A stretch of DNA of 64,000 nt from Blastocystis sp. Blastoise (lineage: Eukaryota; Protista; Bigyra: Opalinata). Below the pieces are notes generated by a model, which saw only the letters and a list, made by a program, of their open reading frames with translations, ran no database searches and was not told the DNA's origin. The translations under genes were made by a program, and so were the position numbers. The stretch is taken from contig JBBPEB010000007.1 of assembly GCA_039096225.1 (NCBI GenBank), positions 248,001 to 312,000 of the forward strand. The letters are read 5' to 3'. Shown in pieces: positions 1 to 26,556 of the stretch (positions are counted from its first letter, which is position 1; each line of letters opens with the position of its first letter).

Positions 1-945
1 ACCTAACTAATAATCTCCTTTTCTTTCCCTTATCAAGTCATTTTTGTAATTGATAATCTATATTCTTATCATAAAGAATTGAATTATAAAAAATGAGGTT
101 TTATATTTAAACATAATTCTATTTCTTCTTTTTTCATCAAATATCTCGATCATTTCTTTTTCTAATAACCTTTATTAACAATATTCATTTGTATATACTT
201 ATAATTCTTATTATGAAATACAAGTATTGTTTATTGTATTTCAAAAATCCATAATCATAATTATTTATATATCTAATCAATAAATCATTCTGTTCTAAAT
301 AGTTTTGACCTCATTCTTTATTTTCCATTAAAAATCCTATTCATAGCATCTTCTTTCTTATTTCTTCATATATATATCTCTTCTTATTCGATAATCAACT
401 TATTCCACAAGAATCATCAATACACAAATCTCAAATAATTCTAATAATTCTAACTGATCTTCATATTCTAATGCATCAAAATCAACAATTTCATAATAGG
501 AATACACATCATTACCCATATAATTAAGGAAAACAGTTCCATCATCAGTTCTATACTCTTCAGAACATTGCTCATCAATAAAAGAACATTTCTAAGTATC
601 TAATTTTGATATCAAAATTCGAAAAACAGGACCATTATTGTTGAAACGAATCAGATCGGTATCTTCTTTATCACATTCATTATACCCATTCTTTTTATGA
701 TTTATAGCTGTAGTATTATGATTATTTAGAGTAGTATTTTCATTATATGAGTGTAATATATCTTCTATTTTGCCATAATCATCATTGAAACGCTTCATAA
801 TATTATTAATAAACATTCTAGAATGAATATCAAGATTTGTTACAGCTGAGAAAACAATTATAACATCTTTCATCAGTTCTTCATATCTATTAATATCTTC
901 CTTCAATCTATTAAACTTCTTAATATCAAATAACCTATCTTTTTA
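1..945 (-). pseudogene. Decayed BTB-TLDc family paralog (5' part; runs off the window start)
   Basis: Reads KDRLFDIKKFNRLKEDINRYEELMKDV..LIRFNNNGPVFRI, matching the N-terminus of 5615-7105. No ATG at the homologous start, an in-frame TAG at 592-594 with homology continuing (SFIDEQ..EEYRTDDGTVFLNY..EDQLELLELFE), then more stops and frameshifts. Confidence 0.85.
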
Positions 946-1155
946 TGCCTTTCTACGAAATATCAACTATAAAAAGAAAAAACAATTTCATTCATTTTTC
1001 CAGTGTAATTACTGTTTTAGACAGGATATCGATCTATTTTCCATGTTATTTTTTTTAACATTATTATTAAGCATAATTCATTTTCTTTTACGTTTTATCA
1101 GTTAATTATTAGTTAGAATTCGTTAAAATAGTATATTGGATTCAATATCAAAAAT

Positions 1156-4100
1156 ATGTCAGAAATAATAAATGAAATTAAGTGTGATCAAGAAAAACTA
1201 GGTATTCTTCTTATTATTCTATTATATTTGAACTATACATAATTAATATAGTTGATTTTATCTTTCAAGATGAGACTAGAATTAAAATTTCAGTGTCATT
1301 TCTTAATAATTATCCCGAATCATTGCTTTCATTAATCTATTTAAATAAAGCAAATTATTTGAAAGATGAAGATGCATATTTTGTTGATTCTCCTACTCTT
1401 CATATCGATAGAATTGTATTATATATGAAAAACGAACTATCTCTGGATACTTTGTCATTTACAGATATATTAGATCTATATTCTGGATTAAAACATTTCT
1501 TTGCTAGTTCATTTCTTGAATATCAAATGAAAATATATGATTATTTGATTTTAAGTATGCAAGAATTCATTGAACAACATGAATGTGGAATGTAATATAT
1601 ATATGTATATATATGTTATATAATATAATAATTGTGGTGATTTATTTGAATTTGATAAAGAAAAGGAATTAACTATTAATAGTATATTATAGAATTCTTT
1701 TCATTTCTCTATTTTTATAGATATATTTACAGAAGAAAGAAACTTATTATTTCAAAAATATTCAAAACTATTTGAGATTTTTAAAGTTACAACAGTTGTT
1801 TTACAATGTATATATATATTATAATATATGTTTATATATATATAGATGATTTTGATGATAGGACTCCTTATGAATATATATATCCCTCCAATTTACATGA
1901 ATTATTTCCTTCTAAAAATCAATATAAAATAAATAGTATGAATATGTAATATAGTATTATATATATATAGTGTCTTATTATCCTCAGAATAAAACTATAC
2001 AATAGATTCTAAAAAATATGATAATAATGATAATCATTATAATGAATATAGTCGTAGTTATTACTCACAACATTACCCTGAATCGTTTGAAAACTATAAA
2101 AATGAACATGAAGAAATGGCTTTCAATCATTCATTTATGAATAAAGATGATAATAAAGAAGATAATAAAGAAGAAATTATACCTTTAAATACAAATAATG
2201 AAATACACTCTTTGAAAGAAGAAGAAAAATCATATTTATATTATGAAATTGATGATTATTATTCCCGTGAATATAATGAGAAACAAAAAGAATTAGAGAA
2301 AAATGATGCTGATATTAAAAAGAAGAAGAAAACAATTAGCTATATTTTCTATTATATAAATAATGAAAATAGTAAATTATATCTATATATATCTTATTAA
2401 TATATATATATAGTTCGTGATATTTTGCATCCAATTTTAGAGTAAAAATATAGACACTATTATTTATAGTTCTATTTTAAATCTTTTTTACTCTGTAACA
2501 ATAATTTAAATATATAAATGTATATAGATATTCAAGTGATGAATGTTATGAAATCTTTAATTATATACTTAATATGCCTATATGTAAACAAATACAAGAA
2601 ATAAAAACAAAATGTATATATATAGAATTCTATTTCTTCTTCTTATTATTATTATATAGCAAGACAAAAAGAAATAATAAATCCAGAAATGCATCCACTT
2701 TTAAAGCATTAAAGAATGGAATATTTGATCATATTTATATATTTAATATTCTTAATTGTATATTTATATATATTGTTATAATAATAATATATATATTAAA
2801 TCTATATATATGTTTAGATATTTAAAGTAAATTCTATTCAAAATATCAAAAATTAATACAAGAAATTATAAGTACACATATTTTTGATAATGTTACAACT
2901 ATAGAAATTAATGGTATATATATATTATATTTATAATTATATTTTCTATATATAGGTGATCATACAAATCAATGTGATATAGAATTTCAAATTGAATTAC
3001 TTCATTTCTTTACAAGAATTCATTTCCCAAAGATATCTATATATGATCTTAGTAAATATTATTGTTGTTGTCCATACGATACTAAATCCAGATTTACAAA
3101 ATATTTAGTACCCTATTCACTTTTAGAATTAATAGATATTATATATATAAAGCATTCAAACTTATATAAGAATACATTTCCTATAAATGTAGAATCATTA
3201 GAAACTATTTTTCAAGTGAAGAAACATCATGATATTACTATTCAATGTATATATATATGATTATGATTTTAAATAATAATGATAATAATACTATTTAGCA
3301 TATATATTAATTGATACATTTGATGAATTAATGAAAATAGTATTATATTCAGGATTATTGATTGATTATGACGTTTATTTTGATTTTATATTATTATATA
3401 TATATAATTATTATATATTATTTATTTATATAGTTGATGATATATCTAAAAGTCTCAGTGATTATTCACTTATTGATTTGAACTTATATCATTCTAAATT
3501 CATTGATGTCGGTATATATTTATTTTATATATATTATTTATATTAAGATAATATATTTTTTATTGAAATACTATATTTATGATAGAATATTCAATATTTA
3601 AAATTAAATTATTATAATATAATATATATAGAAGCTAATATTACAAATTATACTATATTACACAGGATGCAATGTATATGTGAACGAATCAATTGCGATC
3701 ATTTAGAAGCAATATCTATTCACTGTAATCATTTATTATTCTTTTCTTTATATATATATATATATAGTAATTGATATTATAGATGAAACAATAAATGAGT
3801 ATTATAATGAATATATATCATTCTTATCAACATGTAATTATACTACTGTGAATAAATTAACAATAGGTATATATATTAAAATTATAAACAATGAATATTG
3901 ATTATATATAGATAAACATCAATCTTATTTTTCATCATTTGAAACACCTTATTTACAATATATAAAGGAAATTAATGATGTTTTTTATAAATTCTTTTTA
4001 TTATTTTCAAATAATATTCAATATATATATATTTCAGGTATATATACTATTTTTATTCTATTTCAAAATATTAAATATAATTTACATATATAGATTTTAT

Positions 4101-5262
4101 TCTCGCAAAATATTTATTATTTTCAAAGGATACTATACAACTACATTTATGGTCTAATTTACAAGAATTATATCTTTATTTTAGTATAAAATATATGTGA
4201 ATATCTATTCTATACTTACTGTTTATATATAGATGATACTATAGAGAGTTTAAGTCTTACTCTATTTAATGAACTTGATAAAAGACAATTAAATAACTTG
4301 AAAATAGTATCTATTTTATGTCCTTGTATATATACTATGTTCTATTTTATACTTAAGTATTATAGTGTTCTTATAATATTATTAATCAATTTTATATCTA
4401 TATTTATGCTATTCTTGTTTTTTAATTATATAAATCTAATAATTTTATACTAAACTATATATATATATGTATTTAATTATTTCAATTAATTAACTATATT
4501 ATTATTATATAAAACACTATTTAGGTTCTATCTCGTTTGATATGACTCATATATATACATTTATTGATTCATTCAAAAACGTTTCTTCTTCTTCTTTTCA
4601 TAATCTTAATATGTTCAATCTATCAATTCAACCAATGTGTATATATATTCTAATTGAATTCATTATTCTATTTATATACATATTTAACATTTTTTTCACT
4701 TTATTATTATTTTATTTAAATTAATAAGTTATATATAATAATAACTAGAATTCATCATGATTTTCCTATTCTATAGTTGGTGATAATACTATTGATATTC
4801 ATCTACTTGAGTCATTTCCATCCTTCTCTTTCTATTTACATAAGCCAATTACTTCTATTATTATGTGTAAAGATATTTGTTGTTTTGGTAACTCTATTCA
4901 TTCCTATGAAAACTATATATATAATCAATTAAACTCAAAGTATTCAAAGAATATTCAATACTTAGAAATATGTATTTTTATTATGATTTATATATATATG
5001 TTTGTAATATATATATATTATTTTTTTAGTTATCTCAAATCATTCAGTATTCACAAATATTGTACAGTTAGTAGTAAAAGATACATTTCCATTCTTGAAG
5101 AAAATCAAAATATATTTATGCTATTTTTTTAATATAGAATTTATAATATATATAACATCATTTGATTTCAATGAAGAAGTGACATTATTACAATCTTATA
5201 ATGACACTCATTTATTTTATTGTGAAATTATTCAATGTCGTTTACAAGATGATGATTATTAA
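1156..5262 (+). pseudogene. Multi-exon BTB/POZ-like + LRR-like repeat gene (copy A1), probably disabled
   Basis: Spliced start MSEIINEIKCDQEKL/VDFIFQDETRIKISVSFLNNYPESLL..DAYFVDSP is KCTD-like BTB, followed by about 20 short GT-AG exons. There is a 1-bp deletion near 2001 relative to A2, an in-frame TAA at 2823-2825, and no AG acceptor near 1630. Confidence 0.7.
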
Positions 5263-5614: not shown

Positions 5615-7105
5615 TTAAGTTCTTCCCCAGACTTCATAATCTTCTACTTTAAAATCATTTCTAGAATTAGCATTATTAGTATTCACAAATAAGGATGATT
5701 TTTGGGGAGTATTCACTTCAGAATAAGAATGTGCATTACAATAAGAATCAGTATTACTATAACATTGATCAGATATCTTGATGTCATAACCACCTCCAAA
5801 TTTTGGACCATTAGAAGAAGTACAAAATATAGCATAACTTCTATCACTATTTATATAATCATATTTAGTAGGAGGAATACCATGTTCATTACTTAAAGTA
5901 AATAGAAATTCTTTAGAAAAAGATTTAGAACTCCCTGGACGATATTCCCAACTTTGATCTGTATATCCTCCAAATATATTAATATGATTATTATGACCAA
6001 TATGTTTGATTATAGTTACTGTTTCTCCTTTATTATCACAACATCTATGGAATTCACTTGCTTTATATTCATGTTCACTTGCTCTAAATAATAATTTCCA
6101 TTTCTTTTCTTTACCAAGCCAATTCACTAATGGTCTCTCAAATTCTTTATTAATAATAGTTGATTGATTGAACCATCCTGGAATCATTGCTTCTTTTGTT
6201 TCTTCTTTTCCTTTTTCACCAAATAATTCAACCATCTCTTTCTCTAATAATTCTTTATTAATATCATTAATCTTATCTTCTTCTATATATATATATATAT
6301 TATTCACATATTCAGTAATATATTCAATATATTCATATTTCTTATTCATATATAAACTATTATCAATAGGATTATAATTGATAAATCCATTATCATAATT
6401 CTTAACATAATCATTCCATAAACCATTCTTTACTAAATATTCTTTAATAGTATCATTCGTATTTCCATTAATAATCAAAGAAACTTCATCTCCTTCTTCA
6501 TATTTCTTCATCTTTCGATCTCTTCTTTCTCTACAATCTATTAATTCCATAGGAATTACTAAGCCACAAAATTCAAATAAATTCAATAGTTCTAATTGTT
6601 CCTCATAAGAAAAAGAATCAAAATTTACTTTCTTTCCATTCAAATAATCTATTAAATAATAAATAAAAGCATCATTTCCAGGATAATCAAGATATATAGA
6701 TCCATCATTGGCTCTATATTCTTCATCACGTTGTTCTTCAATAAAAGAACCTTTTAAAGAATCTAAAACAGATTTTGATATTTGAAAAATAGGACCATTA
6801 TTGGTAAATCGTATCAAATCCATATCATTATCATCATTATCATCCATATTTACATTCATATCTTCATTATTCTTATCTTTATAAACACATTTCTTTTCAA
6901 ATTCATTACTTTCACCTTCCTTCTCAATACAATCATCTCCAATATGTTTTATAAGTCTATTAATTGACAATCCAGAATGTATTCCAAGATTCATTACTGA
7001 TCCAAATACATTAACTACATCTTTCATCAATTCTTCATATACATTGATATCTTCCTTCAATCTATTGAATTTATCAGTATCAAATAACACCTTTTCTTTC
7101 ACCAT
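5615..7105 (-). CDS. Intronless BTB/POZ-like + TLDc domain protein (~496 aa)
   Basis: Start MVKEKVLFD is shared with the 26556 paralog. BTB-like segment LIRF..FQISKSVL..SFI..DGSIYLDYP..LIDYL..LLNLFEFCGL. C-terminal TLDc motifs KWKLLFRASEH..EFHRCCDNKGETV..IFGGYT..FLFTL..GPKFGGGYDI..FKVEDYEVW. Confidence 0.9.
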   Translation of the reverse strand: MVKEKVLFDTDKFNRLKEDINVYEELMKDVVNVFGSVMNLGIHSGLSINRLIKHIGDDCIEKEGESNEFEKKCVYKDKNNEDMNVNMDDNDDNDMDLIRFTNNGPIFQISKSVLDSLKGSFIEEQRDEEYRANDGSIYLDYPGNDAFIYYLIDYLNGKKVNFDSFSYEEQLELLNLFEFCGLVIPMELIDCRERRDRKMKKYEEGDEVSLIINGNTNDTIKEYLVKNGLWNDYVKNYDNGFINYNPIDNSLYMNKKYEYIEYITEYVNNIYIYIEEDKINDINKELLEKEMVELFGEKGKEETKEAMIPGWFNQSTIINKEFERPLVNWLGKEKKWKLLFRASEHEYKASEFHRCCDNKGETVTIIKHIGHNNHINIFGGYTDQSWEYRPGSSKSFSKEFLFTLSNEHGIPPTKYDYINSDRSYAIFCTSSNGPKFGGGYDIKISDQCYSNTDSYCNAHSYSEVNTPQKSSLFVNTNNANSRNDFKVEDYEVWGRT

Positions 7106-8691: not shown

Positions 8692-9023
8692 TTATAATTC
8701 TTCTAATTCATAATTTACATGATTCTCCTGAATAAATGAAGAATCATTTAATTGTTGTTTATACATATCAAGTTGTTCAGTTGAAATATCACAATCTAAA
8801 TAATAGATTATCTATACAACAATTTATATATATATACCAATATAAAAAATAAATTCTTTTAATTTAGGAATTTTTCCAGTAGAAATAAAATTGACGAGTT
8901 TTATTAATTGTTCATCATCATAAATATATAATTGTGAGTTTCTTATATGTTGAGTTTTATTTTCATTTATACATTCAAATAATGTTTCTATCTCATATTG
9001 ACTCATCGTTTCATCTATATATA

Positions 9024-9102
<79 letters not shown>

Positions 9103-10794
9103 ATTTGTACCCATAATTGCATCTATAAATTTATGACTATCATATTTACATCGAAGAATTGAGTCATAAGAATTATTAATATATTCATCATAAGAATAAT
9201 AACTAGTTAATCGGATAGTACTTGACGATGGAAAGTTATTATTATTCATATATCTACAAAATGTGTTCATTAAATCTTCCCACCAATCTTCACAATCGTT
9301 ACCTATATATATATACATATATATATACATATTATTTAATAAAAATAATGTTTAAATAATGATGAGATTATACATGTATATACATGATTCATAGTTTTAA
9401 ATATATTAATAATAATTATAATAAATATATATATATATACAAAACGTGATAGATCTTAGTTGAGGGAAATTATCAATAGTAAATAGTTTGAAAAAGTTAT
9501 CGTCTGGTATATCCTCAATATCTAAATAAATATATATAAAAATATTAGGATAAAATATTTTATATATTATGATTAAAATACTATATATATTTTATATATT
9601 ATGATTAAAATACTATATATATTTAATATATATACTTAAAAATAATTCAGTTGTATTGTGAAAACACCCTTTTTTAATTAATTGATTTATAAAAGACATG
9701 TAGCAAACTAATAAGAATAGATATTAAAATTATTTAAATAAATAATTTTTACACCTAATAATAATTAATATAAATAATTACATTCTATTGAAACAATAGA
9801 AGCTTTAGGAATTAATTTCTCTAATAAATTTTCATATGTATTTAAACATTCAGATAATGAGTCTTTTTTTATAGAAATCACTATATACATATTCATATGT
9901 TTTATAATATAACATACAGTTAATCTCTAATTCATGAATAGTATTAAACTTATTGTCATCAAAGAGAGTTGATATCCATTCTAAATATTTTAGACTTACA
10001 GCAACAAAAAATGTAATATTTAAACAATTCAGATGCTCTAATACATTACTCTTTAAGAATGTTTCCAATGCATTTCTTTTATCAATTTCACCTTGATCAT
10101 TATTATTATCATTATTATCATCATCTATAAATGAATAAATATTAGTAATATTACTACTATATATCCACAATATATTTATTGCATCTATTAATAAATACCT
10201 TTAATTGCTATATGTAAACAATCAATATTATGTTTATAATTTTTAATAATATCTAATGTTTTGATAGTATCAGAACGACAAGAATCAACTGTATAAAATA
10301 GTATATATATAATATAATATAAAAAGTAATTCAATAAAAGAAGAAAGAAATATTTCATACTTAAAAGATTATCAAAAGAAATAAGATCTTTCTCTAACAA
10401 TTCATTTAAATGCGGAAAATAATAAATAAAATCATCTATAAAAAGTAAATAGATGAACTTAATTATATATATAGTATTATAGTCATAAATATATATATAT
10501 ATATATAATACATAAATTCTTATTAATTCCAACAATATGAATTGAATGTGTATAAGCTAAATCATCTAAAAGAATAGCAACTTCCTCTTTCTCATCACTA
10601 TCAATTTCATTTATACGAATAGTATCAATAATAGATATTAAATTAACAGGAAATAGAGAATCAAAATTGTCAGTAGCTACAATAATTATTATAATAGCTT
10701 ATTAAATAATTTATAAATGTACCTATTGTATTATTATAATTGATAATATGTAATTTTGGAAAGTTTTTTGGATTTATTAAAGATAATTGAAAGG

Positions 10795-10834
<40 letters not shown>

Positions 10835-11084
10835 ATCATTATCATATATAAGTTTAGTAACATTTGAAAATATATGAGTTGTCATTATTTTGTCAAATAA
10901 ATTCTCATCAATTATATTTGTTAATTTATTAACTATATTGAATAATAATAATTGCTATTATATAAAAATAATACCCCTGTCAACATTGAGTGTTGTTATA
11001 GAATCAAAAAGTCCTTCTTCAAATAATTTCATAAAAAGCACAGAATTATATTCAGAAATAGAATCTAAAATAAAATATTAATTC

Positions 11085-11156
<72 letters not shown>

Positions 11157-11750: not shown

Positions 11751-11799
<49 letters not shown>

Positions 11800-12021
11800 A
11801 GTAATATGTAATTCTTTTAATGAAGGGAATATATCTTGAATATTTGTTGGATATATATATTCTAATGGAATATTCGAAGAATAATCATCTATATATAGAT
11901 TATTATTATTTATATTATATTATATATATATATATATAATTTTAACTTTTGTAATACATATCATTTTAATAAGAAGAGAATAATATAATAATTCATCTTT
12001 TCGTTGAGGTGTTATTAATCC

Positions 12022-12060
<39 letters not shown>

Positions 12061-13776: not shown

Positions 13777-16700
13777 ATGTCCCAAGAAACACATTTATAT
13801 GTACATAAGAAACGAAAGTGCGATAATTTAGGCCTACTGAGTGCTAAAAGTGATGAGATATCACATATAAACCTTATTTTTCAAGATGAGAGGAAGATAA
13901 GTATTCCATTGTCGTTTTTGAAGAATTATCAAAATTCTATGTTATATAAAGCATATACGAGTTCTGGAAGTTATTTAAAAGATGAAGGGGCCTATTATAT
14001 CGATTCTCCATTTTTATCTATTGATAAATTAATGGATGTCATGTGTAATTCTGTTCCTCTTGATTCATTCTCATTTCAGGAACTTATTGATTTGAACGAA
14101 ACTTTAACTCATTTTTTAGGATATGAATCGATTGATTATCAAATGAAAATCACAGATTTCCTTGTAAAATTATTCTTGACATTTATTGAAGAAAATTATT
14201 GTGAAGTGTATGCTCTTTAATAACAATAATAATATAAATATATAGAGATAGTGAGATAAAATGCTATTCTAGGAAGTTTATTCATGTGACTCTAAAAGGT
14301 TTGTTAATATTATATATTTCAGTTATTATTTACATTTTATTAATTATTATTTAGATGTATTTACTGAGGAAAGAAACAAGTTATTTCTTCAACATTCTTA
14401 TTTATTTGAATATTTTAATGTTATAGACGTCATTTTAGATTGTATATATATATTATAATATATATAATAAATATATATAGATTCATTTGATGATAGAATT
14501 CCTTATGAATATATATATCCTTCTAATTTACATGAATTATTTCCAAAAATAAAACGTTATGTTATAGAAGGTATATTCTCTTATATTTATAAATTTATTA
14601 CATATCTAGCTTGTTATTATCCATTAAAGAAATATATACAAATAAAACCAACTGATATTCATTATACACTATTATATAAGGAATATAAACGTCAATATTA
14701 TGAAAAGTATTATCCTGAAGCTTATTATATATATAAAGATGAACATCCAGAAATAGAAGCAAATAAGATAAAAGAAGGTCAAGTTCATATATATCCTATG
14801 AATAATCACGGGGATAATGAGAGTATTGAGAAAGAAGAAAAAGAAATTCATCATGAAATTATAGATATAGATATTGATGAAGAAATAAGAAATGAGAAAG
14901 AAGAAGAGAAACCAGATTTATATATAGAATCATTATCTGATTATTCCCGTGAATATAATGAAGAAATGATAAAGAAAGAGAAGAAGGATTCACCGATTGA
15001 TGACAAAATAATATATTCGTTATATTATTTTATATTTGTCGATGATAATGAAAGTATAATATATATATATATAATAATATATTTATTTATAGTAATTGAT
15101 CGACAGCACCCAATATTATAGTATATATATAATATTTATAAATAATTTATATATAGTGACAGAGATTTTGAATCTAATGATATATTATTCTATATATTAA
15201 ATTTACCTATATGTAAGCAACTCAAAAATATAAAAATTAATTGTATATATGAATATATATATATTATAATATATATATAGTTTATAAATTGAAGTTCTTA
15301 TTACAATTAGAAATACCATCTTTATTATTATTCTTAAAAGATTCACTATATTCTTCACTAGAAATATTTAATATCTCTCAGTGTATGTATATATATATTA
15401 TTCTTTATACATATTTATAATAGGAATTTATTCATTTTCTTACGAAGAATTAGAGTCTCTTGAGAATATATATATGAATATGAATTATCAAGAATTACAA
15501 AAATTAACAATAGACTGTATCTTTTTATATAATATCATATATTTTAATATCCTTTATATATATACTATTTAGTGTGTGATCTATATAATAAAGAATATGA
15601 TGTTGTTGAATTCATCAATAAATACTTTTCTTTTCTGTGTAAAGGAAATTATAATACTGTTACTTCTTTAGCTATAAGTATTCTTTATAATATAGTCTTA
15701 ATATTTATTTTATATATATATTAAATTATATTTTTATATAATTAAAAATATAACTATGTTATAAATTATATAATTATTATAGAATACATATTATTATAAT
15801 AATATAGGTTTTCATATGGATATTGAAGAAGAATTAGAGGAATTGAATGAGTTAGAAATCCATGATACCAATAAATCTAATGATTATGAACATATTGAAA
15901 AGAAATTAGAACAACTTTGTGAGTCTGATATACATACATTAAATGATATAATCTATCAATTTTTTTCTTTATTCTCTGATAATATTAAAGAATTCAAAAT
16001 TGATGGTATATATATAATGTATAATTATATATGAATATATATAGGTCACTTTGTTAGAAATAGTATATTTTTAACCGAAAAATATACTAGTCTGCCTTTT
16101 TGGTCAAATATTCAGCATTTATCATTTGACTTAAGTAAATTTATATCTGCTAAATAGTAGTAGTTATAATATATATATATAGTTTGTGATGGTAAGAAAA
16201 AGATATTAAATAGTTTAACACATTTCTTTAAAAATAAAAAACTTAGAAATTTAATATCTTTAAAATTTAATTATGGACGTATATTTATTATTATTATTTT
16301 ATTTATAGATATTTATATAGATCATTTTGAATTATCCAGTTTTCTTGAGTTTATTGAGGGATTCACATTGAATTCTTCTTTTTCTCTTCCTTTTCTCGAT
16401 ACATTTAGTATTATTATAAAAAAAGTATATATAGTATATTATTAGTTATTCTAAATACATAAACTATAGTAATTATTCTATTATTATTTATGATTTACTA
16501 ATACTAATATAATCTATAAAGAGGAGCCAACATCCTACAATGTATTCAATTTCTTTCCTTCTTTTTTATATTTTCTTCATAAACCTATTACGTATATACG
16601 TATGAAAGATTCTATAATTGAATATGAAGAGAATAAAGATGAGAATGATTTATATGATCAATATATATATAATCAATTACAACAAAATTATTGTAAAAAT

Positions 16701-17045
16701 ATTATTGACCTCAATTTATGTATATATATATTATTATAATGAATGTATTTATTATTATTTATATTTATAGGTATAGATGAATCTTCAGTTATATCTAATA
16801 TTATTTATTTAATTATAAATAATCATTTTTGTTATTTAAGAAATCTTTCATTACTTTTTTATGGTAAATATTTATATATATTATAATTTATGTTTATATT
16901 ATTTAATATTGTAAATAAATTATTATTTATACAAGATAATGATACTTATACAAAATATTCATCACTTATTAATAATTATAAAGAGAAATATAATCCTAAT
17001 TTAAATATAACATATCATAATAGACAAATTGATGATTATGATTAG
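13777..17045 (+). CDS. Multi-exon BTB/POZ-like + LRR-like repeat protein (copy A2), apparently intact
   Basis: MSQETHLY..LIFQDERKISIPLSFLKNY..EGAYYIDSP. I could splice about 16 exons in frame to DDYD* at 17043-17045. Paralogous to A1 (FTEERN.LF, FDDR.PYEYIYPSNLHELFP, DYSREYNE, LPICKQ). Confidence 0.8.
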
Positions 17046-17609: not shown

Positions 17610-19531
17610 TTATAAATGATTGACAATAGTTTCTTCAAATGAATAAAAGTTAACTTTGTTTATAACAAATGAATAATGGGTTAATTTGTCTACATACATA
17701 TTAATTTGTTCACTTGGAATATTCCAATCTAAGTAACATAGTATTGATGATAAAGTTATATACTTACTGATGTAAAACAGAATCTCTTTCAATTTAGTTT
17801 GTTTCATATTAGCTATATAATTGACTATTTGCGATAATTGTTCTTCGGAATAAACATCTATAATCGGAAAATATTATTTAAAATAGCTATATAAATTTAC
17901 ATATTTTTAATTTTCTTAGTATTTGAGTCTTATTTTTGTTTATACAATCAAGCAATGTTTCTATTTCATATTTACTCATTATTTTATCTATATATAAATG
18001 CATATATATTCGTTAATATATACTTTTTGTATTAAAAATTGTATCTATATATGAATTATTATCATATTTATATCTAAAAATAGAAGTATCAGGATCATAA
18101 ATATAATCATTATCAGCGGCTATATCTAAATAAATGCAGCATAATTAATATAAAATTAATTATTCTAAAACTTACTTACCATTTAATAGAATAGCACTTG
18201 ATGATGGAAAATTAATATTATTAATAAATCTTAATAATCGCTTAATAAAAGAAATCCACCATTGTGTTTTACTACATCTATCTATATATAAGAATCATAT
18301 TTAATAAAAACAATAATTATAAAATATATATAAATATTATAATTTTTAATAGTATATATTATTATTTAAATATACCAAACTTGATAAATTCTAATTTTTT
18401 GAAATTTTCTGTTGTAAATACTTCATTAAAGCTATCATCTGGTATATCATTTGTTTCTAGAATAATATTTATGAATAAAAATTGATTGAGATATATAATA
18501 TATTATATTTGATTTATATTTTAACAATGTATATATATATATACTTAGAATTAGTTGAGTTGTATTATGAAAACAACCATTGACAATTATTCGGTTTAAA
18601 AAAGTCATATAACAATCTAACCATAATAGCAAATAAATTAAAAATGTATTATTATTAAATAATATACAAATATATTGATATAATTATCTTCTATAGTAAC
18701 AATAGATGCCATACAAATCAATTTCCCCATTATATTCTCAAACATTGTCAAATATTCAGATGATAAGTTTTCTTCGATAGAATATACTATATATATACTA
18801 ATATGTCCTATAATATCATATACAATTAATTGTGATATCATGAAGAGTATTATATTTATTATCATTAAATAAATTTGATATCCATTCTAAATATTTTATA
18901 CTCATATTATCATCAACTATAAATAATATAAAAACATAATAATAATAACAATATAAAAATACATGAAACATTTATACTATTAATATTCTCTAATATATTA
19001 CTCTTCATGAATTTTTCTATCGAATTTCTTATATCATTTTTATTTGTATCATCATAATCATTATTATTTTTTTTATCATTATTATTATTATTATTATTAT
19101 TATGATTATTATTATCATCATTATTATTTTTATCATTATCATTATCATTATTTTTATCATTATCATTATCATTATCATTATCATCTATAAAATAATACTT
19201 TTAGTAATATATATATACTATATATCAAATAAATATAAATAATTACTTTTGAATCTTATATTTAAGCAATCAATATTTTGTTTATAGTTTTCAAAATAAT
19301 TTAATTTTTTTATGTTATCAGAGTTAGAAGCATCAACTTTATAAAATAAGACATATAAGATACAAGGTATAATATATAACATTATAAAAAAAATATATTC
19401 ATACTAGAAAGACTATGAATCGATATAAGTTTTTTCTCGAATAATTCTGCTAAATGTGGAAATTTATAAATTAGATCATCTATATAAAATAAGAAAGAAT
19501 ATAATTAATTATATAGATAGTTTTAGTATTC

Positions 19532-19585
<54 letters not shown>

Positions 19586-21534
19586 AATTCCATCAATATG
19601 AATTGAATGAGTATGAATTAAATTATCTAAAACAATCAATTCTATATCTCCACATCTACAGTTTTCATGCATGTGAATAATATCAATTATAGATATTATA
19701 TTCATAGGAAATAGAGACTCAAACGCAGAAGAATCTGTGATTTAAAAAATATTTATAAAATATTTATAGATATTTAAATATACAAATTTCAACCATATAG
19801 TTGATAATATGTAATTTAGGGAAGTATTCTTTCTTTATTAAAGACAATTGGAAAGAATCTATATATATACATATACATATAAACATATACTATCATTATA
19901 TATAAGTTCAGTAACATTAGGAAATATATGAGTTGCCAGTATTTCTTTAAATAGATTATTATACATTTTATGAGTTAATTCTTTAACTATATTGAATAAT
20001 TATATATTAATAATAATAATTAAAATAATACTCCATCCAACACAAAATGTAGTTAAAGAATCAAAAACACCTTCTTCAAATAATTTCATAATAATTATAG
20101 ATTTATATTTTGAATTATCATCTAAAAAAAATTATTTATTTATATATATATATATTTAGTTACGTGTATTTTTCTTGATTTGTGAAATAGAATAACATGA
20201 AGAAAGACCTAATAATTGAGATATACCCAATTTAGAAGAAACTTCATTAATACTATTTAATATAGAGTAGCATAAATTCATAATATAAAATATTAATAAT
20301 ATTTACATGAATGCTTTATCATTTGTTTTATCTATATATAATATTAATAAATTTTTAAATATTTTAATATATATATACCATTATATTCAATACTGATTTG
20401 ATCATTTGATGTATATTCGTCTTTTGTTTCACTGATTTCTACATTCGAATAATCATTTGTATATATAGCTTCATTAACTATATATGCATATAATTTGGGT
20501 AATTCATTCTTTTCTCTTTTTTCATTATATGAGTCAATCATATCTTGAGAATAATATGAATAATTAATATTTATAGAAGAAATATTATTATATTCATTCA
20601 TTTCGGATTCTGTGTAATAATTATAGTTTTCATATTTACTTATTTCATCTTCATCACTATAATATAAACGAATATATTCCATTAAATATTCATCACTATT
20701 TGGATTTAATAATAGTTCACTTTTCTTATAATGCGTATTTACTATATAATATGTTTATTAATAATATGCTATATATATATATATATATACAAGTTATAGT
20801 TAATATCTTTAATGAAGGGAATATATCTTTAATACACGATGGCAATATGTATTCTAATGGAATACTCGAAGCATAATCATCTTTGCATATATTAATATAA
20901 TATTCTATATAAATATATACATACATTCAATTTCAACTTTTGTAATATTCATCATTTTAATAAGGTATGAATAATATATTAATTCATCTTTTAATTGTAT
21001 TGTAAACAATCCTGATACATATATATGTAATACATGATTATCCTCAATAGATTTTATTTTACTTGAACTAAATAATTCAATAGACAAATAATGATTGTTA
21101 TAAAGATCATGATGATCAGCAATAGAAATACTATTATCAATTAAATAATCAGTAAATCTATCTTGAATATGATATAATAAATCACTTTTTATATCACTAT
21201 CTATTACATCCGGGTATTCAAGAAGTTTATTATATATATCATAGCTATCTTTCAAATCTAATGAATTAATGTCAACACAATCTTCTATCAAAAAAAGAAG
21301 CACTTTTTTAATCGTCAAAAAAGGTATATCTATATAATAACTACCATCCTCATATTTCTCAGAGTGTACAATAATATCATAGAAGGGTAATTGACGATAT
21401 TTCTCAATAAATTCTGTAGGAACCCATAATTGCGTCTCATCTTGAAATGTAAATAAATCTATCAGAAAATAAATGATTTTTATTCATATTTATTTACATT
21501 TATCTTCAGATAGTTTGGTTGTATCATCTGACAT
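17610..21534 (-). CDS. Multi-exon BTB/POZ-like + LRR-like repeat protein (copy B2)
   Basis: MSDDTTKLSEDK../LFTFQDETQLWVPTEFIEKY..DGSYYID. Exon-by-exon paralog of B1 (YTESEMNEYN, YIVNEAIYTNDYS.VEISET, GCFHNTT.L). Last exon ends TIVNHL* at 17610. Has an N/D-rich expansion near 19045-19185. Confidence 0.75.
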
Positions 21535-21710
21535 GATTTTTTAAACTTTGTAAACGCAACAATCAACCAAAAAAAATAAGGACACTATTTTTTAAATAAT
21601 AGAATATTATATCTAAAAATAAAATAAGAATTTGAAAGTAAGTATGCAAAATTATAAGTAATTCAAATAATTTAAAATTAAAAAAAAAATTAAAAAAATA
21701 AAGAAATAAG

Positions 21711-23063
21711 TTGGCCAGACTAAATTGCGCTATTAAATATTCTCGGTTCTGGCGGATATTTTAAACCAGAAAATGACAAAAAAAACGCAGTGAAAAAATC
21801 GATCTTATCACGATTATAAAGTAGTTATTTCTGACAATTTTTTAAAAACAAAAAATCGAGGTACAAAAACACGTTTTTTGCTATTTTAAGGGCAAAATTA
21901 TTTGAATATAAAAGAAATTATATTTTTATTTATATATATATGTTATTTAAATTATAAGAAAAGTGAGATATGAATCATAACATTAAAAATAAATGAGATA
22001 TTAAGAAAAGTCTATAATCATTAAAAAAGTAAAATTATAGAGAAAAAAAGTTAATAAACCTGGGAATGCTAAAAAAATTCTTTTTTTTCCATATTATTTA
22101 ATTCTCTATTTTAGATTAATAACAGAAAAAAACTATTTAAATTTAATTAATTCAGATATTATTATATGTATATATTTGTGGAAAAATATCATTTAAAGCT
22201 ATAAACGTTATTTTCTAAGAATCAATACAATTATGTTTATAAAATGCATTATTCGTGTATAATCAGCAAAGTATTATTACTAAGACTACATATATTAAAA
22301 TATTTTATTAAAAAGTCCGTGTTTTCTGAATACTCAAAATGAGAAATAAATCGGTTTTATTCCTAAGAAATGTCTCAGTGTTTCTTAAACAACGATTTAA
22401 ACACGTAAATGTTGCCATTTATTAATTCACATTATATTCACATACACAAAATAGTTTTTTAGTTGCAATTTGTTTTAAATAAATATTTTAAAAATACACA
22501 TCTTGTTAATTATGCTTGAATAGTCATATTTTATAAACATAATTATATTGATTCTTAGAAAATAACGTTTATAGCTTTAAATGATATTTTTCCACAAATA
22601 TATACATATAATAATATCTGAATTAATTAAATTTAAATAGTTTTTTTCTGTTATTAATCTAAAATAGAGAATTAAATAATATGGAAAAAAAAGAATTTTT
22701 TTAGCATTCCCAGGTTTATTAACTTTTTTTCTCTATAATTTTACTTTTTTAATGATTATAGACTTTTCTTAATATCTCATTTATTTTTAATGTTATGATT
22801 CATATCTCACTTTTCTTATAATTTAAATAACATATATGTATAAATAAAAATATAATTTCTTTTATATTCAAACGTCTTTGCCCTTAAAATAGCAAAAAAC
22901 GATTTTTGTACCTCGATTTTTATTTTTGAAAAATGATCAAAAGAATACTACTTTATAATCGTGATAAAACCAATTTTTTCACTGCGTTTTTTTTGTTATC
23001 TTTCTGGTTAGTAGTATCCGCCAGAAACCGAGAACAGTTAATAGCGCAATTTAGTCTGGCCAA
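21711..23063. mobile_element. Non-autonomous foldback DNA transposon with ~535-bp inverted arms and 8-bp TSD
   Basis: Begins TTGGCCAGACTAAATTGCGCTATTAA and ends TTAATAGCGCAATTTAGTCTGGCCAA. Arms at ~21711-22245 and ~22528-23063 flank a ~280-bp spacer. GAAATAAG is duplicated at 21703-21710 and 23064-23071. No ORF. Confidence 0.9.
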
Positions 23064-24915
23064 GAAATAAGAGTAAAAAATAAAATTATTTACGGTTTTG
23101 TTATAGTTATTTCTGAATCAATGAATACTAGTTTTTATAGTTTTTTTTGTGTCAACTACGTTCGATTATTCATGTATTTTATATAGGAATTCATTCAACA
23201 AGTTTTGTATTCCGTTTAGAGTATTTTAAAGCAGTTTACAGAATTTATAGATGTGATTATCAATAAGTTATTGGTTAGAAATTGAATATTAGTTACCCTT
23301 AGATTAGGAGAAATCGTTAAGAACAATATAAGAATGAAAATAAGTACATCTACACGTTGTTGTTATCAATTATACAAATAAATTCTATAGAAATGAGTAT
23401 TTATTCATCTTCATTATTTATTGTATATTACTCAAACAATAAAATACATATTTTCATTGTTTTCGAATTTTAATGGATTTAATCTCCTTTGAATAATCGA
23501 AAAATGACTCTTTAAAGGTAGAACGATCATTTACTAATTAATATTTATGGTTTAAAGCTCTTACTATATTTTTTGTTTGTAAGTTCTTCAAATTATATAA
23601 TAATTAATTTTTAACATGAGACTGTATGGGTTTTGTGTTTTTTATTTATATATTATTATTGATAGGTATTAAAAAGTGTTGTACCACAATCTAGAATATA
23701 TATATATATAAATTATATGTTTGGTGAGTAATCATTAATCTATGTGGATAATAAATATATATATATAATACTTATATCTCTTTTTTTCTTATATCTCTAT
23801 ATATAATTCTAAAAAGCTAAAAATAAATATATAATATAATTTGAGTAATATAATTCTTTGTTTTATTTGAAATCATTTGGATTATATGTATATATTTAAT
23901 AATAGCCATCATAAAATTAATGAATTAAGCCAACAACAAAAAACGTCATTGTTTTATTTCATTCATGTTTATAAATAGAATATATAATAAACAAATTTAA
24001 CAAAAAGAATAGTAATATCATGGATTATTTCTTAGAATTATATATAACTAAATATTGTAAATCATATCTTAATTAAGTGATTATTAACATCAAAAGGCTC
24101 GGTTAATATATTTTTTTTACTTATATATATATATATTAAATAAAACTAATTATTATCTATATCATTTGAAAAACTGGAGGTTTTTTAATCGAAATTCATG
24201 TGACATATATCGAAACAAATTTTTTATGAGTTTTTTTTAGTTGTCACATTCAAAAGAAACTACATTAGATTGGATTGTCTATTAGAAAGAACTAATATAC
24301 TTTCATAATGACAGTTATTATTAGATATACACTCTAAATCCTTTTAGCTAAAAAATGATTTATTTTTCTATATAATATTTTTAAATTATTTTTAATGTTA
24401 AACATTATTTATAGCTTTGTATTGCCTGTTTGGAATGCACATATAGTTATCTTTCACAAAAAAATTTTAACTTTGATATAACAAACTTTATAATATATTC
24501 TCCATTATAAGCAATATTTAGAATTTATCATGATATAGAAAAACAATATATAAAAAAATTAAAAATGAAAAATTTTTATTGATATATACTTAGGGTCAAC
24601 GTTAATTATGAAATTAGTATATTTACCATATATATAAAAGAATCTTATCAATAAATTATCAATAAATCATCCCTGATCAAGTTATATTTTTTGTATAAAT
24701 ATATTATTATATTCAAAAGCATATAAAATGATGAAACTATATTGCTAGAAACCAAAGAATAATAATATACTTATAATTAAAATTAAAAACAGTAATAAAA
24801 ATGTACATTCAATACAAATATATATATATATATAATATTATAAATAAAAATGAGTAATTATTAAATATGATATTGAAAAAATAACATAATAGAAACTAAA
24901 TAGTTTCGTGAATAG

Positions 24916-26556
24916 TTAAGCTCTTCCATATACTTCATAATCTTCTACTTTAAAATAATTAGCATAATTACTATAATTAGTTTCATGTGTATTTACAAAT
25001 AATGCACTTTTTTGGGAAGTATCAAATTCTTCATAATATCTTGCTTCACAACATGACTTATCATTCGAATGACAATTATCAGATATTTTAATATCACTAC
25101 CACTGTCACCAAATGAAGGACCACAAGAAGGTGAACAATAAATTCCATATTTCGAATAATAATTATAATTTCTAGAATACTCATATTTAGTAGGAGGAAT
25201 ATTATGTTCATTTGTTAAAGTAAAGAGAAACTCTTTTGAATAAGATTTATTTACTATATATAAATATATATATTGTGTATTTACATAGAATATATATATA
25301 TACATACCACAAGAATTATAATAGGGTGATTCCCAATTTTGATCTGTATATCCTCCAAATATATTAATATGATTATTATGACCTATATGCTTAATAAAAG
25401 TAACTGTTTCTCCTTTTCGATCACAATATTTATGGAATTCACTTGCTTTATACTCATGTTCACTTGCTCTATATATATATATATTATAAAACAGAATATA
25501 TATATAACATACCTAAATAATAATTTCCATTTCTTTTCTTTACCAAGCCAATTGACTAATGGAGTTTCCATCATATTATTAACAATGATTTTTGTACTTA
25601 AAAAATACTGTACAGGAACCATAGCTTCTTTAGCTATTTCTTTTCCTTTATCTCCAAATAAACTATACATTTCATCTATTATTAATTCTTTTTCTACTTT
25701 TCTATCTTCTTCTGAAACATAAACACTGTTAGATATCATAAATTGATAGATATATTTTAGATATTTATAATTCAACTTTACAAATAAGTTATTTTCATTT
25801 GCATCATTATCAATGATTCCATTATTATATACATAACCATATTCATCAATAATATTCTTCCAATAATCATTCTTTTTTAAATAATTACATATTACTGAAT
25901 CTTTTTTACCATTTATATAAAGAATAACTTCTTCACCACCTTTATACTTCTTTATATTCTTATCTCTCTGTTCACGAATAATATTTAAATCTTCAGGAAT
26001 AGGTAGATTTAAGAATTCAAACATTCTCAATAATTCAACTTGATCTTCTGTATTCAATTGATCCATATTCATTTTTGAATTGATTAGCAAATCAATAAGT
26101 AAAGGAGCGCAAGAATCGTCATAAGGATAATCTATAAATACATTGTCATCATCTGTTTCATTATTATTTTGGCATTGTTCATAAATTGAACTACCTACTA
26201 ATGAAATTGCTATTTTCTTTGGAAGTGAGTAAGAAATACCGTTTGATTTAAAACGAATAAAATAAGTGCTATCTTGTTTTTCAGGAGTTTCTTCAAGCTT
26301 GCAAATATTATCATCTTCCTTTTTTGTAATTGCTGAATTGTGTTCGATTGCACAAACTTCTTGTTCTTTCTCCCTTTCAATGCAATCATCACCGATATGT
26401 TTAACAAGTCTTGTAATGGACATCAGAATGAAGACCAAAAGTTAATACTGATGTAAAAACACCAACTATATCTTTCATCAATTCTTCATAGCAACTGATA
26501 TCTTCTTTCAAACGATCAAATCGATTGGAATCGAATAATACCCTTTCCTTCACCAT
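24916..26556 (-). pseudogene. BTB-TLDc paralog with two introns and an early frameshift
   Basis: MVKERVLFDSNRFDRLKEDI.. shifts frame at ~26424 before MSITRLVKHIGDD. Introns at 25469-25512 and 25254-25307. The TLDc C-terminus is intact to EDYEVYGRA*. It could still be translated from the ATG at 26423, or the indel may be an error. Confidence 0.7.

What the first reader, a model, noticed from the sequence alone, without database searches (positions are those of the whole stretch)
1..26556. Seven-gene BTB array mixing LRR-like and TLDc C-termini: candidate diversifying Cullin-3 adaptor or recognition system
Seen: all seven genes in the first 26.5 kb have a KCTD-like BTB segment (F[QT]..[FI].I...L....S......DG.[YI][YF].D.P) near the N-terminus. 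It is joined to a TLDc domain in three copies and a long LRR-like solenoid in four. Copies are highly diverged, three look disabled, and DNA transposons lie in and beside the array. Established: BTB proteins act as CUL3 substrate adaptors, TLDc domains bind the V-ATPase, and LRR arrays under birth-and-death turnover typify non-self recognition. Inference: a lineage-specific ubiquitin-based surveillance repertoire with variable recognition subunits and BTB partners.
Basis: partly seen in the sequence, partly recalled or inferred. Interest (0 to 1): 0.8.

Follow-up and report, generated by a model that had tools for sequence, protein, structure and literature searches.

The report
Amplified BTB-LRR and BTB-TLDc gene triads
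This 26-kb stretch of a tortoise-gut Blastocystis genome holds about two and a half copies of a three-gene module (two BTB-plus-leucine-rich-repeat proteins and one BTB-plus-TLDc protein) that recurs across the genome, fills at least 4% of its genes, is found in no other organism searched, and has no known function.

Summary
The observation largely holds. The window is contig C29:248001-312000 of Blastocystis sp. "Blastoise" (strain Rus-B). Its first 26.6 kb carry seven genes of three families. T has an N-terminal helix, a KCTD/T1-type BTB, a middle domain and TLDc. A and B each have a KCTD/T1-type BTB and an F-box-LRR/NLR-like horseshoe. Pfam confirms TLDc; predicted structures confirm both BTB folds, TLDc and the LRR horseshoe. 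A and B are homologous along their whole length.

The families are very large: at least 242 T, 95 B and 37 A annotated proteins, all from this genome, about 4.4% of its genes. They co-cluster strongly in a recurring order, A> <T <B. A is always paired divergently with T or B.

Two T copies are dead (T1, T3). A1, A2, B1 and T2 have complete GenBank models. B2's model is truncated. Two repetitive mobile-type insertions sit in the array.

Selection is purifying but relaxed (omega about 0.2-0.6), so gene-wide diversifying selection is not shown. No CUL3 orthologue was found, so the ubiquitin-adaptor reading stays an analogy.

First-stage readers of this scan noted the same co-clustering on three other pieces of this genome. 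The genome paper does not mention these families.

The parts
355..933 (-). T1psi: pseudogene of the BTB-TLDc family (N-terminal helix plus BTB part); its decayed remainder runs off the left edge of the window
   Evidence: tblastn covers aa 7-203 of P0001 at 49.5% identity. There are 3 in-frame stops. The remnant for aa 221-422, with 9 stops, lies at C29:247687-248308.
1156..5259 (+). A1: BTB-LRR gene of type A, GenBank WA158_007062 (P0122, 773 aa, 18 exons). BTB is about 1189-1550; the LRR horseshoe is about 2350-5250.
   Evidence: Exact exon mapping. AF2 model pLDDT 77.7. BTB Z 10.0; LRR matches.
5618..7105 (-). T2: intact single-exon BTB-TLDc gene (P0001, 496 aa). BTB is 6512-6832; TLDc is 5618-6178.
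   Evidence: Pfam TLD 85.4 bits. AF2 pLDDT 79.6. BTB Z 10.4 and TLDc Z 19.4.
8695..12558 (-). B1: BTB-LRR gene of type B, GenBank WA158_007064 (P0240, 824 aa, 18 exons)
   Evidence: Exact exon mapping. Collinear with P0129 over aa 14-866. B and A profiles are homologous at E 3.5e-56.
12783..13694 (.). Nested repetitive insertion in the B1/A2 divergent intergenic region: outer ends of about 90 bp, seen elsewhere as inverted pairs, enclose a repeat of about 765 bp
   Evidence: Paralogous cassettes align up to 12782 and again from 13695. A 27-nt inverted repeat sits at 12785-12811 and 13666-13692. The inner repeat has 16 further copies at 75-95% identity; the outer ends occur as inverted pairs on C13 and C4.
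13777..17042 (+). A2: BTB-LRR gene of type A, GenBank WA158_007065 (P0142, 718 aa, 16 mapped exons)
   Evidence: Exact exon mapping. 95% nucleotide identity over 3.8 kb to C23:384493-388317. pN/pS 0.20-0.48 and no stops in the paralogues.
17634..21534 (-). B2: BTB-LRR gene of type B, GenBank WA158_007066 (P0275, 707 aa; the model ends at 18175). Its status is uncertain.
   Evidence: Exon mapping. Homology to P0138 covers aa 1-847 down to 17634. A stop follows ...LLNGK at 18172-18174, then a stretch of about 17 codons with three stops in all (counting that one), which could be an extra intron or a lesion.
21703..23071 (.). Foldback-type non-autonomous DNA element (21711-23063) with an 8-bp target-site duplication, GAAATAAG
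   Evidence: Inverted arms 91-98% complementary. The duplication was read directly. Five genomic copies are 99-100% identical.
24919..26556 (-). T3psi: BTB-TLDc gene with a frameshift at codon about 45 (near 26425-26441). The rest is collinear with the family, and the TLDc part is split by gaps in the match of about 35 nt.
   Evidence: Three tblastn pieces in frames -2, -3, -2 overlap by 17 nt. Sequence read. Pfam TLD E 6e-11.

Best explanation
SHOWN. The stretch is a segment of a lineage-specific, genome-wide amplification of a three-gene module in a tortoise Blastocystis. The module encodes three soluble proteins with no N-terminal signal peptide. Each carries a KCTD/T1-type BTB domain.
- A and B join the BTB, through a conserved linker, to a long irregular LRR horseshoe of the F-box-LRR/NLR kind. 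Roughly one repeat is encoded per exon.
- T joins a conserved N-terminal helix and the BTB to a middle domain and a TLDc domain.
- The units are ordered A> <T <B. A always shares a divergent intergenic region with T (about 0.2-0.3 kb) or B (about 1 kb).
- Units multiply by segmental duplication and exchange segments. They are under purifying but relaxed selection and decay into pseudogenes. The window holds one full unit (A1-T2-B1), one unit lacking T (A2-B2) and two dead T genes.

INFERRED. The BTB domains oligomerise, as KCTD BTBs do (my knowledge). They may form mixed A/B/T assemblies, so that the LRR horseshoes act as variable ligand-recognition arms, in the manner of cullin-RING substrate receptors. 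The TLDc subunit may couple the assembly to the V-ATPase, and hence to vacuolar or endosomal membranes.

The descriptive part is near certain. The mixed-oligomer recognition mechanism is about 30% likely. Dependence on CUL3 specifically is less likely than that.
For: - Genome identity: the window is G000:C29, and contig lengths equal those attached to the 'Blastocystis sp. Blastoise' proteins. Rus-B is Blastoise.
- Folds: T2; A1.
- Sequence link of the A/B N-terminus to BTB_2. Weak profile link between the T and A/B BTBs, in the matching region: E 1.9e-4.
- A and B are homologous over 825 columns.
- Family sizes and restriction to one genome: 242 T (the 120 listed are all Blastoise), 95 B and 37 A (all Blastoise). 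An exhaustive HMMER search of 1.84 billion representatives with the N-terminal profile gave only 73 hits. Of the 20 looked up, the 14 with a source name were all Blastoise; the other six were unnamed metagenomic proteins, one of them a generic 8x BTB_2 protein.
- Module order: 12 other loci plus the window show it.
- Co-clustering statistics: (P below 1e-17).
- En-bloc duplication and mosaicism: a 7.4-kb alignment spans T2 and B1 at 76%. In one paralogous locus B1 is 80% identical but A2 is 95%.
- Selection: omega 0.21 (N-helix) to 0.63 (TLDc) in T and 0.20-0.48 in A2 duplicates, with no stops in the paralogues.
- The GenBank models come from a pipeline tuned to prefer RNA-seq-supported introns.
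- Nearest shapes for the LRR part are F-box/LRR, FBXL18 and PRAME substrate receptors.
- Solved TLDc proteins matched by T2 are V-ATPase binders: mEAK7, Oxr1, NCOA7B and Rtc5p.
Against: - Pfam calls neither BTB nor LRR above threshold in A or B. Best scores are BTB_2 16.2 bits against 21.4 and LRR_14 12.6 bits against 40.
- Z of about 10 for a repeat protein is below the aligner's caution line of about 13 for repeats.
- B itself was not folded.
- No oligomer or complex was modelled, so hetero-oligomerisation, ligand recognition and V-ATPase binding are inferences from family knowledge.
- Co-linearity may reflect en-bloc duplication alone rather than a functional partnership.
- Gene-wide omega below 1 gives no sign of an arms race. 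NG86 in a 20% GC genome may also mis-estimate dS.
- Only one clear cullin locus was found, and it does not resemble CUL3 best.
Confidence: 0.5

Rival explanations
1. Classical CUL3-RING substrate adaptors. Each A, B and T protein binds CUL3 through its BTB and presents substrates through the LRR or TLDc domain, giving a ubiquitin-based surveillance repertoire.
For: - The BTB fold is of the KCTD type. It matches KCTD7 from a solved KCTD7-Cullin3 complex at Z 9.3-9.4.
- KCTD proteins commonly act as Cul3-dependent E3 ligases (PMC5664961 abstract).
- The LRR part most resembles F-box-LRR and PRAME receptors.
- BTB-LRR is the architecture of the Protochlamydia PEX1 family, interpreted as ubiquitin-pathway effectors (PMC4209131).
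Against: - No CUL3 orthologue was identified. The Pfam Cullin and Cullin_Nedd8 scans find one clear locus (C15:290-292.5 kb) plus one weak Nedd8-like hit.
- An exon of that cullin matches CUL4B, CUL5 and CUL1, and no CUL3 chain appears at E up to 1.
- Several KCTDs and all Kv T1 domains do not bind CUL3 (my knowledge).
- The T BTB has no sequence-level match to any solved KCTD, so binding residues could not be compared.
Confidence: 0.2
2. Cullin-independent V-ATPase regulators. T proteins are oligomeric TLDc regulators of the V-ATPase of the large central vacuole. A and B are scaffolds or targeting partners. The many copies reflect dosage or stage-specific variants rather than recognition of non-self.
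For: - TLDc is the best-supported domain.
- All solved relatives found are V-ATPase-bound TLDc proteins.
- T is the largest family and mostly single-exon.
- The BTB_2+TLDc architecture is widespread in eukaryotes, including stramenopile diatoms.
- Cells in culture are dominated by a central vacuole (PMC10690189).
Against: - Hundreds of paralogues at 45-82% identity are hard to explain by dosage.
- TLDc is not the most constrained part (omega 0.63 against 0.21 for the N-helix).
- The tight linkage to two LRR families is left unexplained.
Confidence: 0.15
3. Largely non-adaptive or selfish amplification ('genomic drift'). A duplication-prone cassette spread by unequal or ectopic recombination. 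Most copies are redundant and slowly decaying, with no repertoire function.
For: - Pseudogenes and truncated copies are common. The window has 2-3 of 7, and many genomic hits carry stops or cover only part of the protein.
- Omega of about 0.5 is relaxed.
- Mosaic identity suggests frequent ectopic exchange.
- The same argument was made for the chlamydial F-box and BTB families (PMC4209131 abstract).
Against: - Omega is clearly below 1 in recent duplicates, with no stops in three A2 paralogues.
- The N-helix and linker motifs are strongly conserved.
- Order and orientation are kept across cassettes as diverged as 67-75% in DNA.
Confidence: 0.13
4. Cargo of a large mobile element, or an assembly artefact.
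For: Copies are dispersed over most contigs, and transposon-like repeats sit inside the array.
Against: - No transposase-like ORF is evident among the ORFs of 100 aa or more listed for the first 27 kb; all lie in or beside the seven genes, and the remainder were not scanned against family libraries.
- The two repeats are insertions private to this cassette, or unrelated to arrays elsewhere.
- Copies differ by 5-33% in DNA, so they are not collapsed or duplicated assembly.
Confidence: 0.02

Closest known systems
Protochlamydia PEX1 family (N-terminal BTB plus C-terminal LRR, 73 members; Domman et al. 2014, PMC4209131)
   Same: Both have a BTB-then-LRR architecture and form a large lineage-specific family evolving by birth and death, partly in tandem arrays.
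   Different: PEX1 is bacterial and its members are presumed secreted effectors without introns. No TLDc partner and no fixed three-gene module are reported in the passages read. No sequence relationship was detected here; the only link is a weak feature-based lead to a chlamydial LRR cluster (score 0.79).
KCTD proteins (BTB_2/T1-type BTB; many are CUL3 adaptors)
   Same: The BTB fold matches KCTD13, KCTD10, KCTD5, KCTD9 and KCTD17 at Z about 10 over nearly the whole domain. The BTB sits near the N-terminus and is followed by a partner-binding domain.
   Different: The Pfam BTB_2 threshold is not reached. The C-terminal domains (LRR, TLDc) differ from those of human KCTDs. Oligomeric state and CUL3 binding are untested.
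F-box-LRR receptors (FBXL, TIR1/COI1), PRAME, and plant BTB-BACK-LRR 'FBL11'
   Same: The horseshoe has a similar shape. The logic is an adaptor domain plus an LRR recognition arm. Plant FBL11-like clusters are the nearest by language-model features, though weakly (0.81).
   Different: The adaptor domain is a T1-type BTB, not an F-box or BTB-BACK. The repeats are irregular and invisible to Pfam LRR models.
BTB_2+TLDc proteins of other eukaryotes, and TLDc proteins OXR1, NCOA7, mEAK7 and Rtc5
   Same: Same two domains in the same order. Clusters occur in Rotifera, Evosea and diatoms. The TLDc fold matches at Z 15-19.
   Different: This genome has at least 242 copies, with an added conserved N-terminal helix and a middle domain, and physical linkage to two LRR families.
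Expanded adaptor families: MATH-BTB in grasses (PMC4091423), and MATH-BTB and F-box in nematodes (my knowledge); head-to-head paired NLR genes of plants (my knowledge)
   Same: These are lineage-specific expansions of E3-adaptor-like genes. Paired NLRs likewise have divergently transcribed partner genes kept together.
   Different: The recognition domains differ, no positive selection is shown here, and the unit here is a triad repeated about a hundred times.

Membership tests
BTB/POZ, KCTD/T1 subtype (Pfam BTB_2, PF02214) | Score at or above the Pfam gathering threshold (21.4 bits) | tested here: not met
   Best scores are 14.8 bits (A1 exon) and 16.2 bits (P0154). Nothing was found for T2.
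BTB/POZ, KCTD/T1 subtype (Pfam BTB_2, PF02214) | BTB fold covering the whole domain | tested here: met
   T2 aa 92-198: Z 10.4, rmsd 3.3 A, 100 aa against KCTD13. A1 aa 12-115: Z 10.0, rmsd 3.0 A, 98 of 101 aa against KCTD17. Both are predicted models, with pLDDT 85-97 in these parts.
BTB/POZ, KCTD/T1 subtype (Pfam BTB_2, PF02214) | Sequence-profile link to bona fide members | tested here: met
   The A/B N-terminal profile hits P0170 (eight Pfam BTB_2 domains, E 5.5e-136) at E 2e-13 over 8 stretches. The T BTB links to the A/B BTB only weakly (hhalign E 1.9e-4, probability 47%).
BTB/POZ, KCTD/T1 subtype (Pfam BTB_2, PF02214) | Homo- or hetero-oligomerisation through the BTB | not testable with these tools
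   No multimer prediction was available.
TLDc (PF07534) | Pfam threshold and TLDc fold | tested here: met
   85.4 bits against 24.5. Z 19.4, rmsd 2.1 A, 158 aa against NCOA7-AS 7obp.
TLDc (PF07534) | Binding to the V-ATPase V1 sector | not tested
   Inferred only from the solved complexes that the fold search returned (7u8o, 7fde, 7uzg, 9nn1).
Leucine-rich repeat horseshoe (RI / FBXL / NLR type) | Pfam LRR models above threshold | tested here: not met
   No LRR family reached threshold in 10 full-length proteins. The best was LRR_14 at 12.6 bits against 40.
Leucine-rich repeat horseshoe (RI / FBXL / NLR type) | Alternating strand-helix solenoid that superposes on known LRR domains | tested here: met
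   The model has about 14 strand-helix units. Foldseek probability 1.0, E 2.4e-5 to 2e-4, 400-470 columns against NLRP5, COI1, TIR1, RI and FBXL3. VIA Z 9-10 over 270-380 aa, below the caution line for repeats. This is a predicted model of A1 only; B follows by homology.
CUL3-RING substrate adaptor | A CUL3 orthologue exists in the genome | tested here: inconclusive
   One clear cullin locus (C15) and one weak Nedd8-domain hit (C13) were found. An exon of the C15 gene matches CUL4B (E 8e-4), CUL5 and CUL1, and no CUL3 chain at E up to 1. Six-frame searches across many introns are insensitive.
CUL3-RING substrate adaptor | The BTB binds the CUL3 N-terminal domain | not testable with these tools
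   No residue-level alignment to KCTD/CUL3 complexes could be obtained, and no multimer model was available.
Birth-and-death multigene family | Lineage-specific tandem or dispersed duplicates of graded age, with pseudogenes | tested here: met
   DNA identity to paralogous cassettes ranges from 67% to 95%. There are pseudogenes T1 and T3. All named relatives come from one genome.

The most novel reading that the evidence does not exclude
The A/B/T triads are a combinatorial cytosolic recognition system of a new kind. Neighbouring genes would encode subunits that co-assemble through their T1-type BTB domains into mixed oligomers. Two different LRR arms would sense ligands such as viral, bacterial or transposon proteins. 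The TLDc subunit would dock the complex on V-ATPase-bearing membranes, or switch the pump. About a hundred linked triads would provide the repertoire, making this a protist analogue of paired NLR loci built from entirely different parts.
Probability: 0.12. Interest if true: 0.85.

Novelty: new variant of a known kind. Interest (0 to 1): 0.6.

Why it matters
At least 374 annotated genes, about 4.4% of the proteome and probably more, belong to three linked families. The genome paper does not mention them. No paper in the searched library connects Blastocystis with TLDc, BTB or KCTD.

Large private families in gut protists are usually surface antigens. This one has no N-terminal signal peptide and is built from an oligomerisation domain, receptor-like horseshoes and a V-ATPase-binding domain. 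It comes as a fixed triad with shared divergent intergenic regions.

If the triad is a functional unit, it offers a tractable case of how eukaryotes outside animals and plants build recognition repertoires. It would also give TLDc proteins a role beyond pump regulation. If it is drift, it is a striking example of cassette amplification in a host-associated protist, in the tortoise-associated lineage whose genomes are larger than those of the human-associated subtypes.

Tried and rejected
- Pfam on single exons and on full-length A and B proteins gave no BTB or LRR call above threshold.
- Sequence searches of solved structures returned only weak TLDc hits for the T-family profile and no KCTD hits for a BTB-only T profile. 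Residue-level comparison of CUL3-contact positions was therefore impossible.
- The look-up of encoding contigs for P0001 found no record.
- The genome paper has no supplementary files held as text.
- The N-terminal cullin exon gave no solved-structure match.
- tblastn stop counts are uninformative for the multi-exon genes, because alignments run through in-frame introns. I relied instead on exact mapping of GenBank proteins returned by the tools, and on collinear block chaining.
- The mobile-element-cargo and assembly-artefact readings were considered and rejected (see rivals).

Full report
WHERE THE WINDOW COMES FROM
The window has about 20% G+C. The longest ORF in the region (5618-7192, minus strand) gave 242 database relatives. 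The 120 listed all carry the name Blastocystis sp. 'Blastoise'. The window is G000:C29:248001-312000 of a 33.3-Mb, 34-contig assembly. Its contig lengths equal those attached to these proteins. The genome paper equates Blastoise with strain Rus-B from a Russian tortoise: 33.3 Mb, 23% GC, 8,547 genes. That paper contains no occurrence of TLDc, BTB, LRR or ubiquitin.

THE SEVEN GENES
Three belong to a family I call T.
- T2 (5618-7105, minus) is an intact single exon of 496 aa (P0001).
- T1 (355-933) matches only aa 7-203, has three in-frame stops, and continues off the left edge as a remnant with nine stops.
- T3 (24919-26556) is collinear with the family but has a 2-nt frameshift in the glycine codon at about position 45.

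Four genes are multi-exon. The exhaustive and word-based protein searches returned their GenBank products, which I mapped back exactly:
- A1 = WA158_007062 (P0122, 773 aa, 18 exons);
- B1 = WA158_007064 (P0240, 824 aa, 18 exons);
- A2 = WA158_007065 (P0142, 718 aa);
- B2 = WA158_007066 (P0275, 707 aa).

B2's model ends at a stop (18172-18174), although blocks homologous to the family continue to 17634. The stretch of about 17 codons that begins at that stop holds three stops in all and could be an unannotated intron or a lesion. The annotation pipeline was tuned to choose RNA-seq-supported introns. That is indirect evidence that the annotated genes are transcribed.

DOMAINS
Pfam finds TLDc in T2 (85.4 bits, cut-off 24.5) and in T3.

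An AlphaFold2 model of T2, built on 36 paralogues (pLDDT 79.6), has these parts:
- a long N-terminal helix;
- a disordered variable linker;
- residues 92-198, which superpose on KCTD BTB domains (KCTD13 Z 10.4, rmsd 3.3 A, 100 residues);
- an untested middle domain;
- residues 310-496, which superpose on TLDc domains (NCOA7 Z 19.4).

For the LRR-type genes, Pfam gives only sub-threshold BTB_2. A profile of the four window N-termini was searched against 1.84 billion representatives and found 73 proteins. Nearly all are 700-950-aa Blastoise proteins. One exception is a metagenomic protein with eight bona fide BTB_2 domains, hit at E 2e-13.

The A1 model (pLDDT 77.7) has residues 12-115 on KCTD17 (Z 10.0, rmsd 3.0 A, 98 of 101 residues). 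Residues about 291-770 form an alternating strand-helix horseshoe. It matches NLRP5, COI1, TIR1, ribonuclease inhibitor, FBXL3 and NLRC4 (Foldseek probability 1.0; VIA Z 9-10). In the ESM Atlas its nearest shapes are F-box/LRR, FBXL18 and PRAME families.

A and B profiles align over 825 columns at E 3.5e-56, so B shares the architecture. A weak profile match (E 1.9e-4) aligns the A/B BTB with the T BTB in the right place.

FAMILY SIZE AND RANGE
Annotated proteins number at least 242 for T, 95 for B and 37 for A. Every B and A hit, and every listed T hit, comes from this genome. Together they are 4.4% of 8,547 genes. Six-frame searches of the assembly gave 659, 217 and 229 first-look candidates for T, the B first exon and the A first exon. 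Many of these carry stops.

The BTB_2+TLDc architecture is known in other eukaryotes, including diatoms. No relative of A or B was found elsewhere.

CO-CLUSTERING
- Of the 30 best T loci, 27 have an A or B first exon within 7 kb, against a chance expectation of 8-17% per locus.
- Independently, 31 of 40 T locus tags have a B tag within three positions, against a chance of 6.5%.
- Twelve fetched loci show the same order and orientation, readable as a repeated A> <T <B. A is always divergent from T (about 0.3 kb) or from B (about 1 kb).

The window reads T1psi, A1, T2, B1, A2, (no T), B2, foldback element, T3psi. A further B (WA158_007060) and another T lie to the left, outside the window.

First-stage notes of this scan on three other pieces of the genome reported the same co-clustering. 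I tested it as described above.

DYNAMICS
DNA identity to other cassettes ranges from 67% to 95%. One 7.4-kb alignment spans T2 and B1 together at 76%. Within a single paralogous locus, the B1 segment is 80% identical but the adjoining A2 segment is 95%. This implies en-bloc duplication plus later exchange between cassettes.

Among 12 T genes, NG86 dN/dS has a median of 0.55:
- N-terminal helix 0.21;
- BTB 0.49;
- middle domain 0.51;
- TLDc 0.63;
- linker about 0.9.

For the unsaturated A2 duplicates, pN/pS is 0.20-0.39 in the BTB and 0.41-0.48 elsewhere, with no stops in the paralogues. The genes are therefore maintained by selection, but loosely.

MOBILE DNA
A 1.35-kb foldback element (21711-23063) has a perfect 8-bp target duplication and five copies 99-100% identical in the genome. 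This indicates very recent movement. A 912-bp insertion private to the B1/A2 intergenic region (12783-13694) is a repeat of about 765 bp (16 other copies) nested inside an element with inverted ends of about 90 bp.

MECHANISM
What is shown is a triad of BTB-domain proteins with no N-terminal signal peptide, kept together and amplified.

By analogy with KCTD proteins, the BTB domains should oligomerise. By analogy with F-box-LRR and NLR proteins, the horseshoes should bind ligands. By analogy with OXR1, mEAK7 and Rtc5, the TLDc should bind the V-ATPase. My preferred reading is a BTB-mediated, possibly mixed, assembly that joins LRR recognition arms to a V-ATPase-binding subunit.

The CUL3 version is weaker. 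Only one clear cullin locus was detected, and its exon resembles CUL4B, CUL5 and CUL1 rather than CUL3. Intron-rich genes are, however, hard to find in six frames.

A non-adaptive amplification remains a serious rival. That argument was made for the closest architectural parallel, the 73-member BTB-LRR family of Protochlamydia (PMC4209131).

VERDICT
The architecture claims hold at the level of predicted structure. Co-clustering is strongly confirmed. 'Diversifying' and 'CUL3' are not established. I class it as a new variant of a known kind: a lineage-specific expansion of adaptor-plus-repeat proteins, made notable by the fixed three-gene module and the TLDc partner.

Noticed in passing
window 21703-23071: A foldback element with an 8-bp target duplication (GAAATAAG) and only five genomic copies, 99-100% identical (C29, C4, C3, C2, C1). 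It is a very recently mobile, low-copy non-autonomous DNA transposon. The other four copies are not near A, B or T hits in my lists.
   Followed up: yes
window 12783-13694: A nested insertion in the B1/A2 divergent intergenic region. A repeat of about 765 bp (16 other copies, 75-95% identity) lies inside an element whose ends of about 90 bp occur elsewhere as inverted pairs about 670 bp apart (C13:850484-851150, C4:1733156-1733820).
   Followed up: partly
window 13900-13953: The GenBank model of A2 (P0142) splices out 54 in-frame nucleotides (18 aa) from the middle of the BTB domain. This is either an alternative junction seen in RNA or an annotation artefact.
   Followed up: no
window 2616-2957: The 342-nt 'intron' of the A1 model contains an in-frame stretch (around 2700-2770) encoding the family's conserved ...ALK.G.FD... 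motif. A1 may therefore have lost or skipped one repeat exon, which may be why a first-stage note on this window called it disabled.
   Followed up: partly
Many exons of A and B are 87 nt (29 aa), about one repeat each.
   Followed up: partly
G000:C15:290059-292539 and C13:393465-393530: Only one clear cullin gene, heavily split by introns, and one weak Cullin_Nedd8-like hit were found in the whole 33-Mb genome by six-frame family scans. The cullin repertoire may be very small.
   Followed up: partly
L019 (G000:C29:238500-248400): The array continues left of the window: another T (first 65 aa, 89% identical to T2) at C29:238501-238695, a B gene (WA158_007060, P0254) at C29:240205-243965, then about 3.7 kb without a recognisable A gene before T1psi.
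   Followed up: partly
P0061, P0067, P0072, P0081 and others (about 700 aa): A subclass of T proteins is about 200 aa longer. Residues 494-698 of P0061 align a second time to the TLDc region of T2 (32% identity), so these seem to carry two TLDc domains.
   Followed up: partly
P0123 (WA158_006655, 1174 aa): A B-type protein is annotated as fused to a NEMP-family domain (Pfam E 2e-21 at aa 863-1079). It is probably two neighbouring genes merged by the annotation.
   Followed up: no
window 13695-17514 against L011, and 8585-12782 against L011: Adjacent segments of one paralogous cassette differ sharply in identity to the window (95% and 80%). This is a signature of ectopic exchange or gene conversion between cassettes.
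   Followed up: partly
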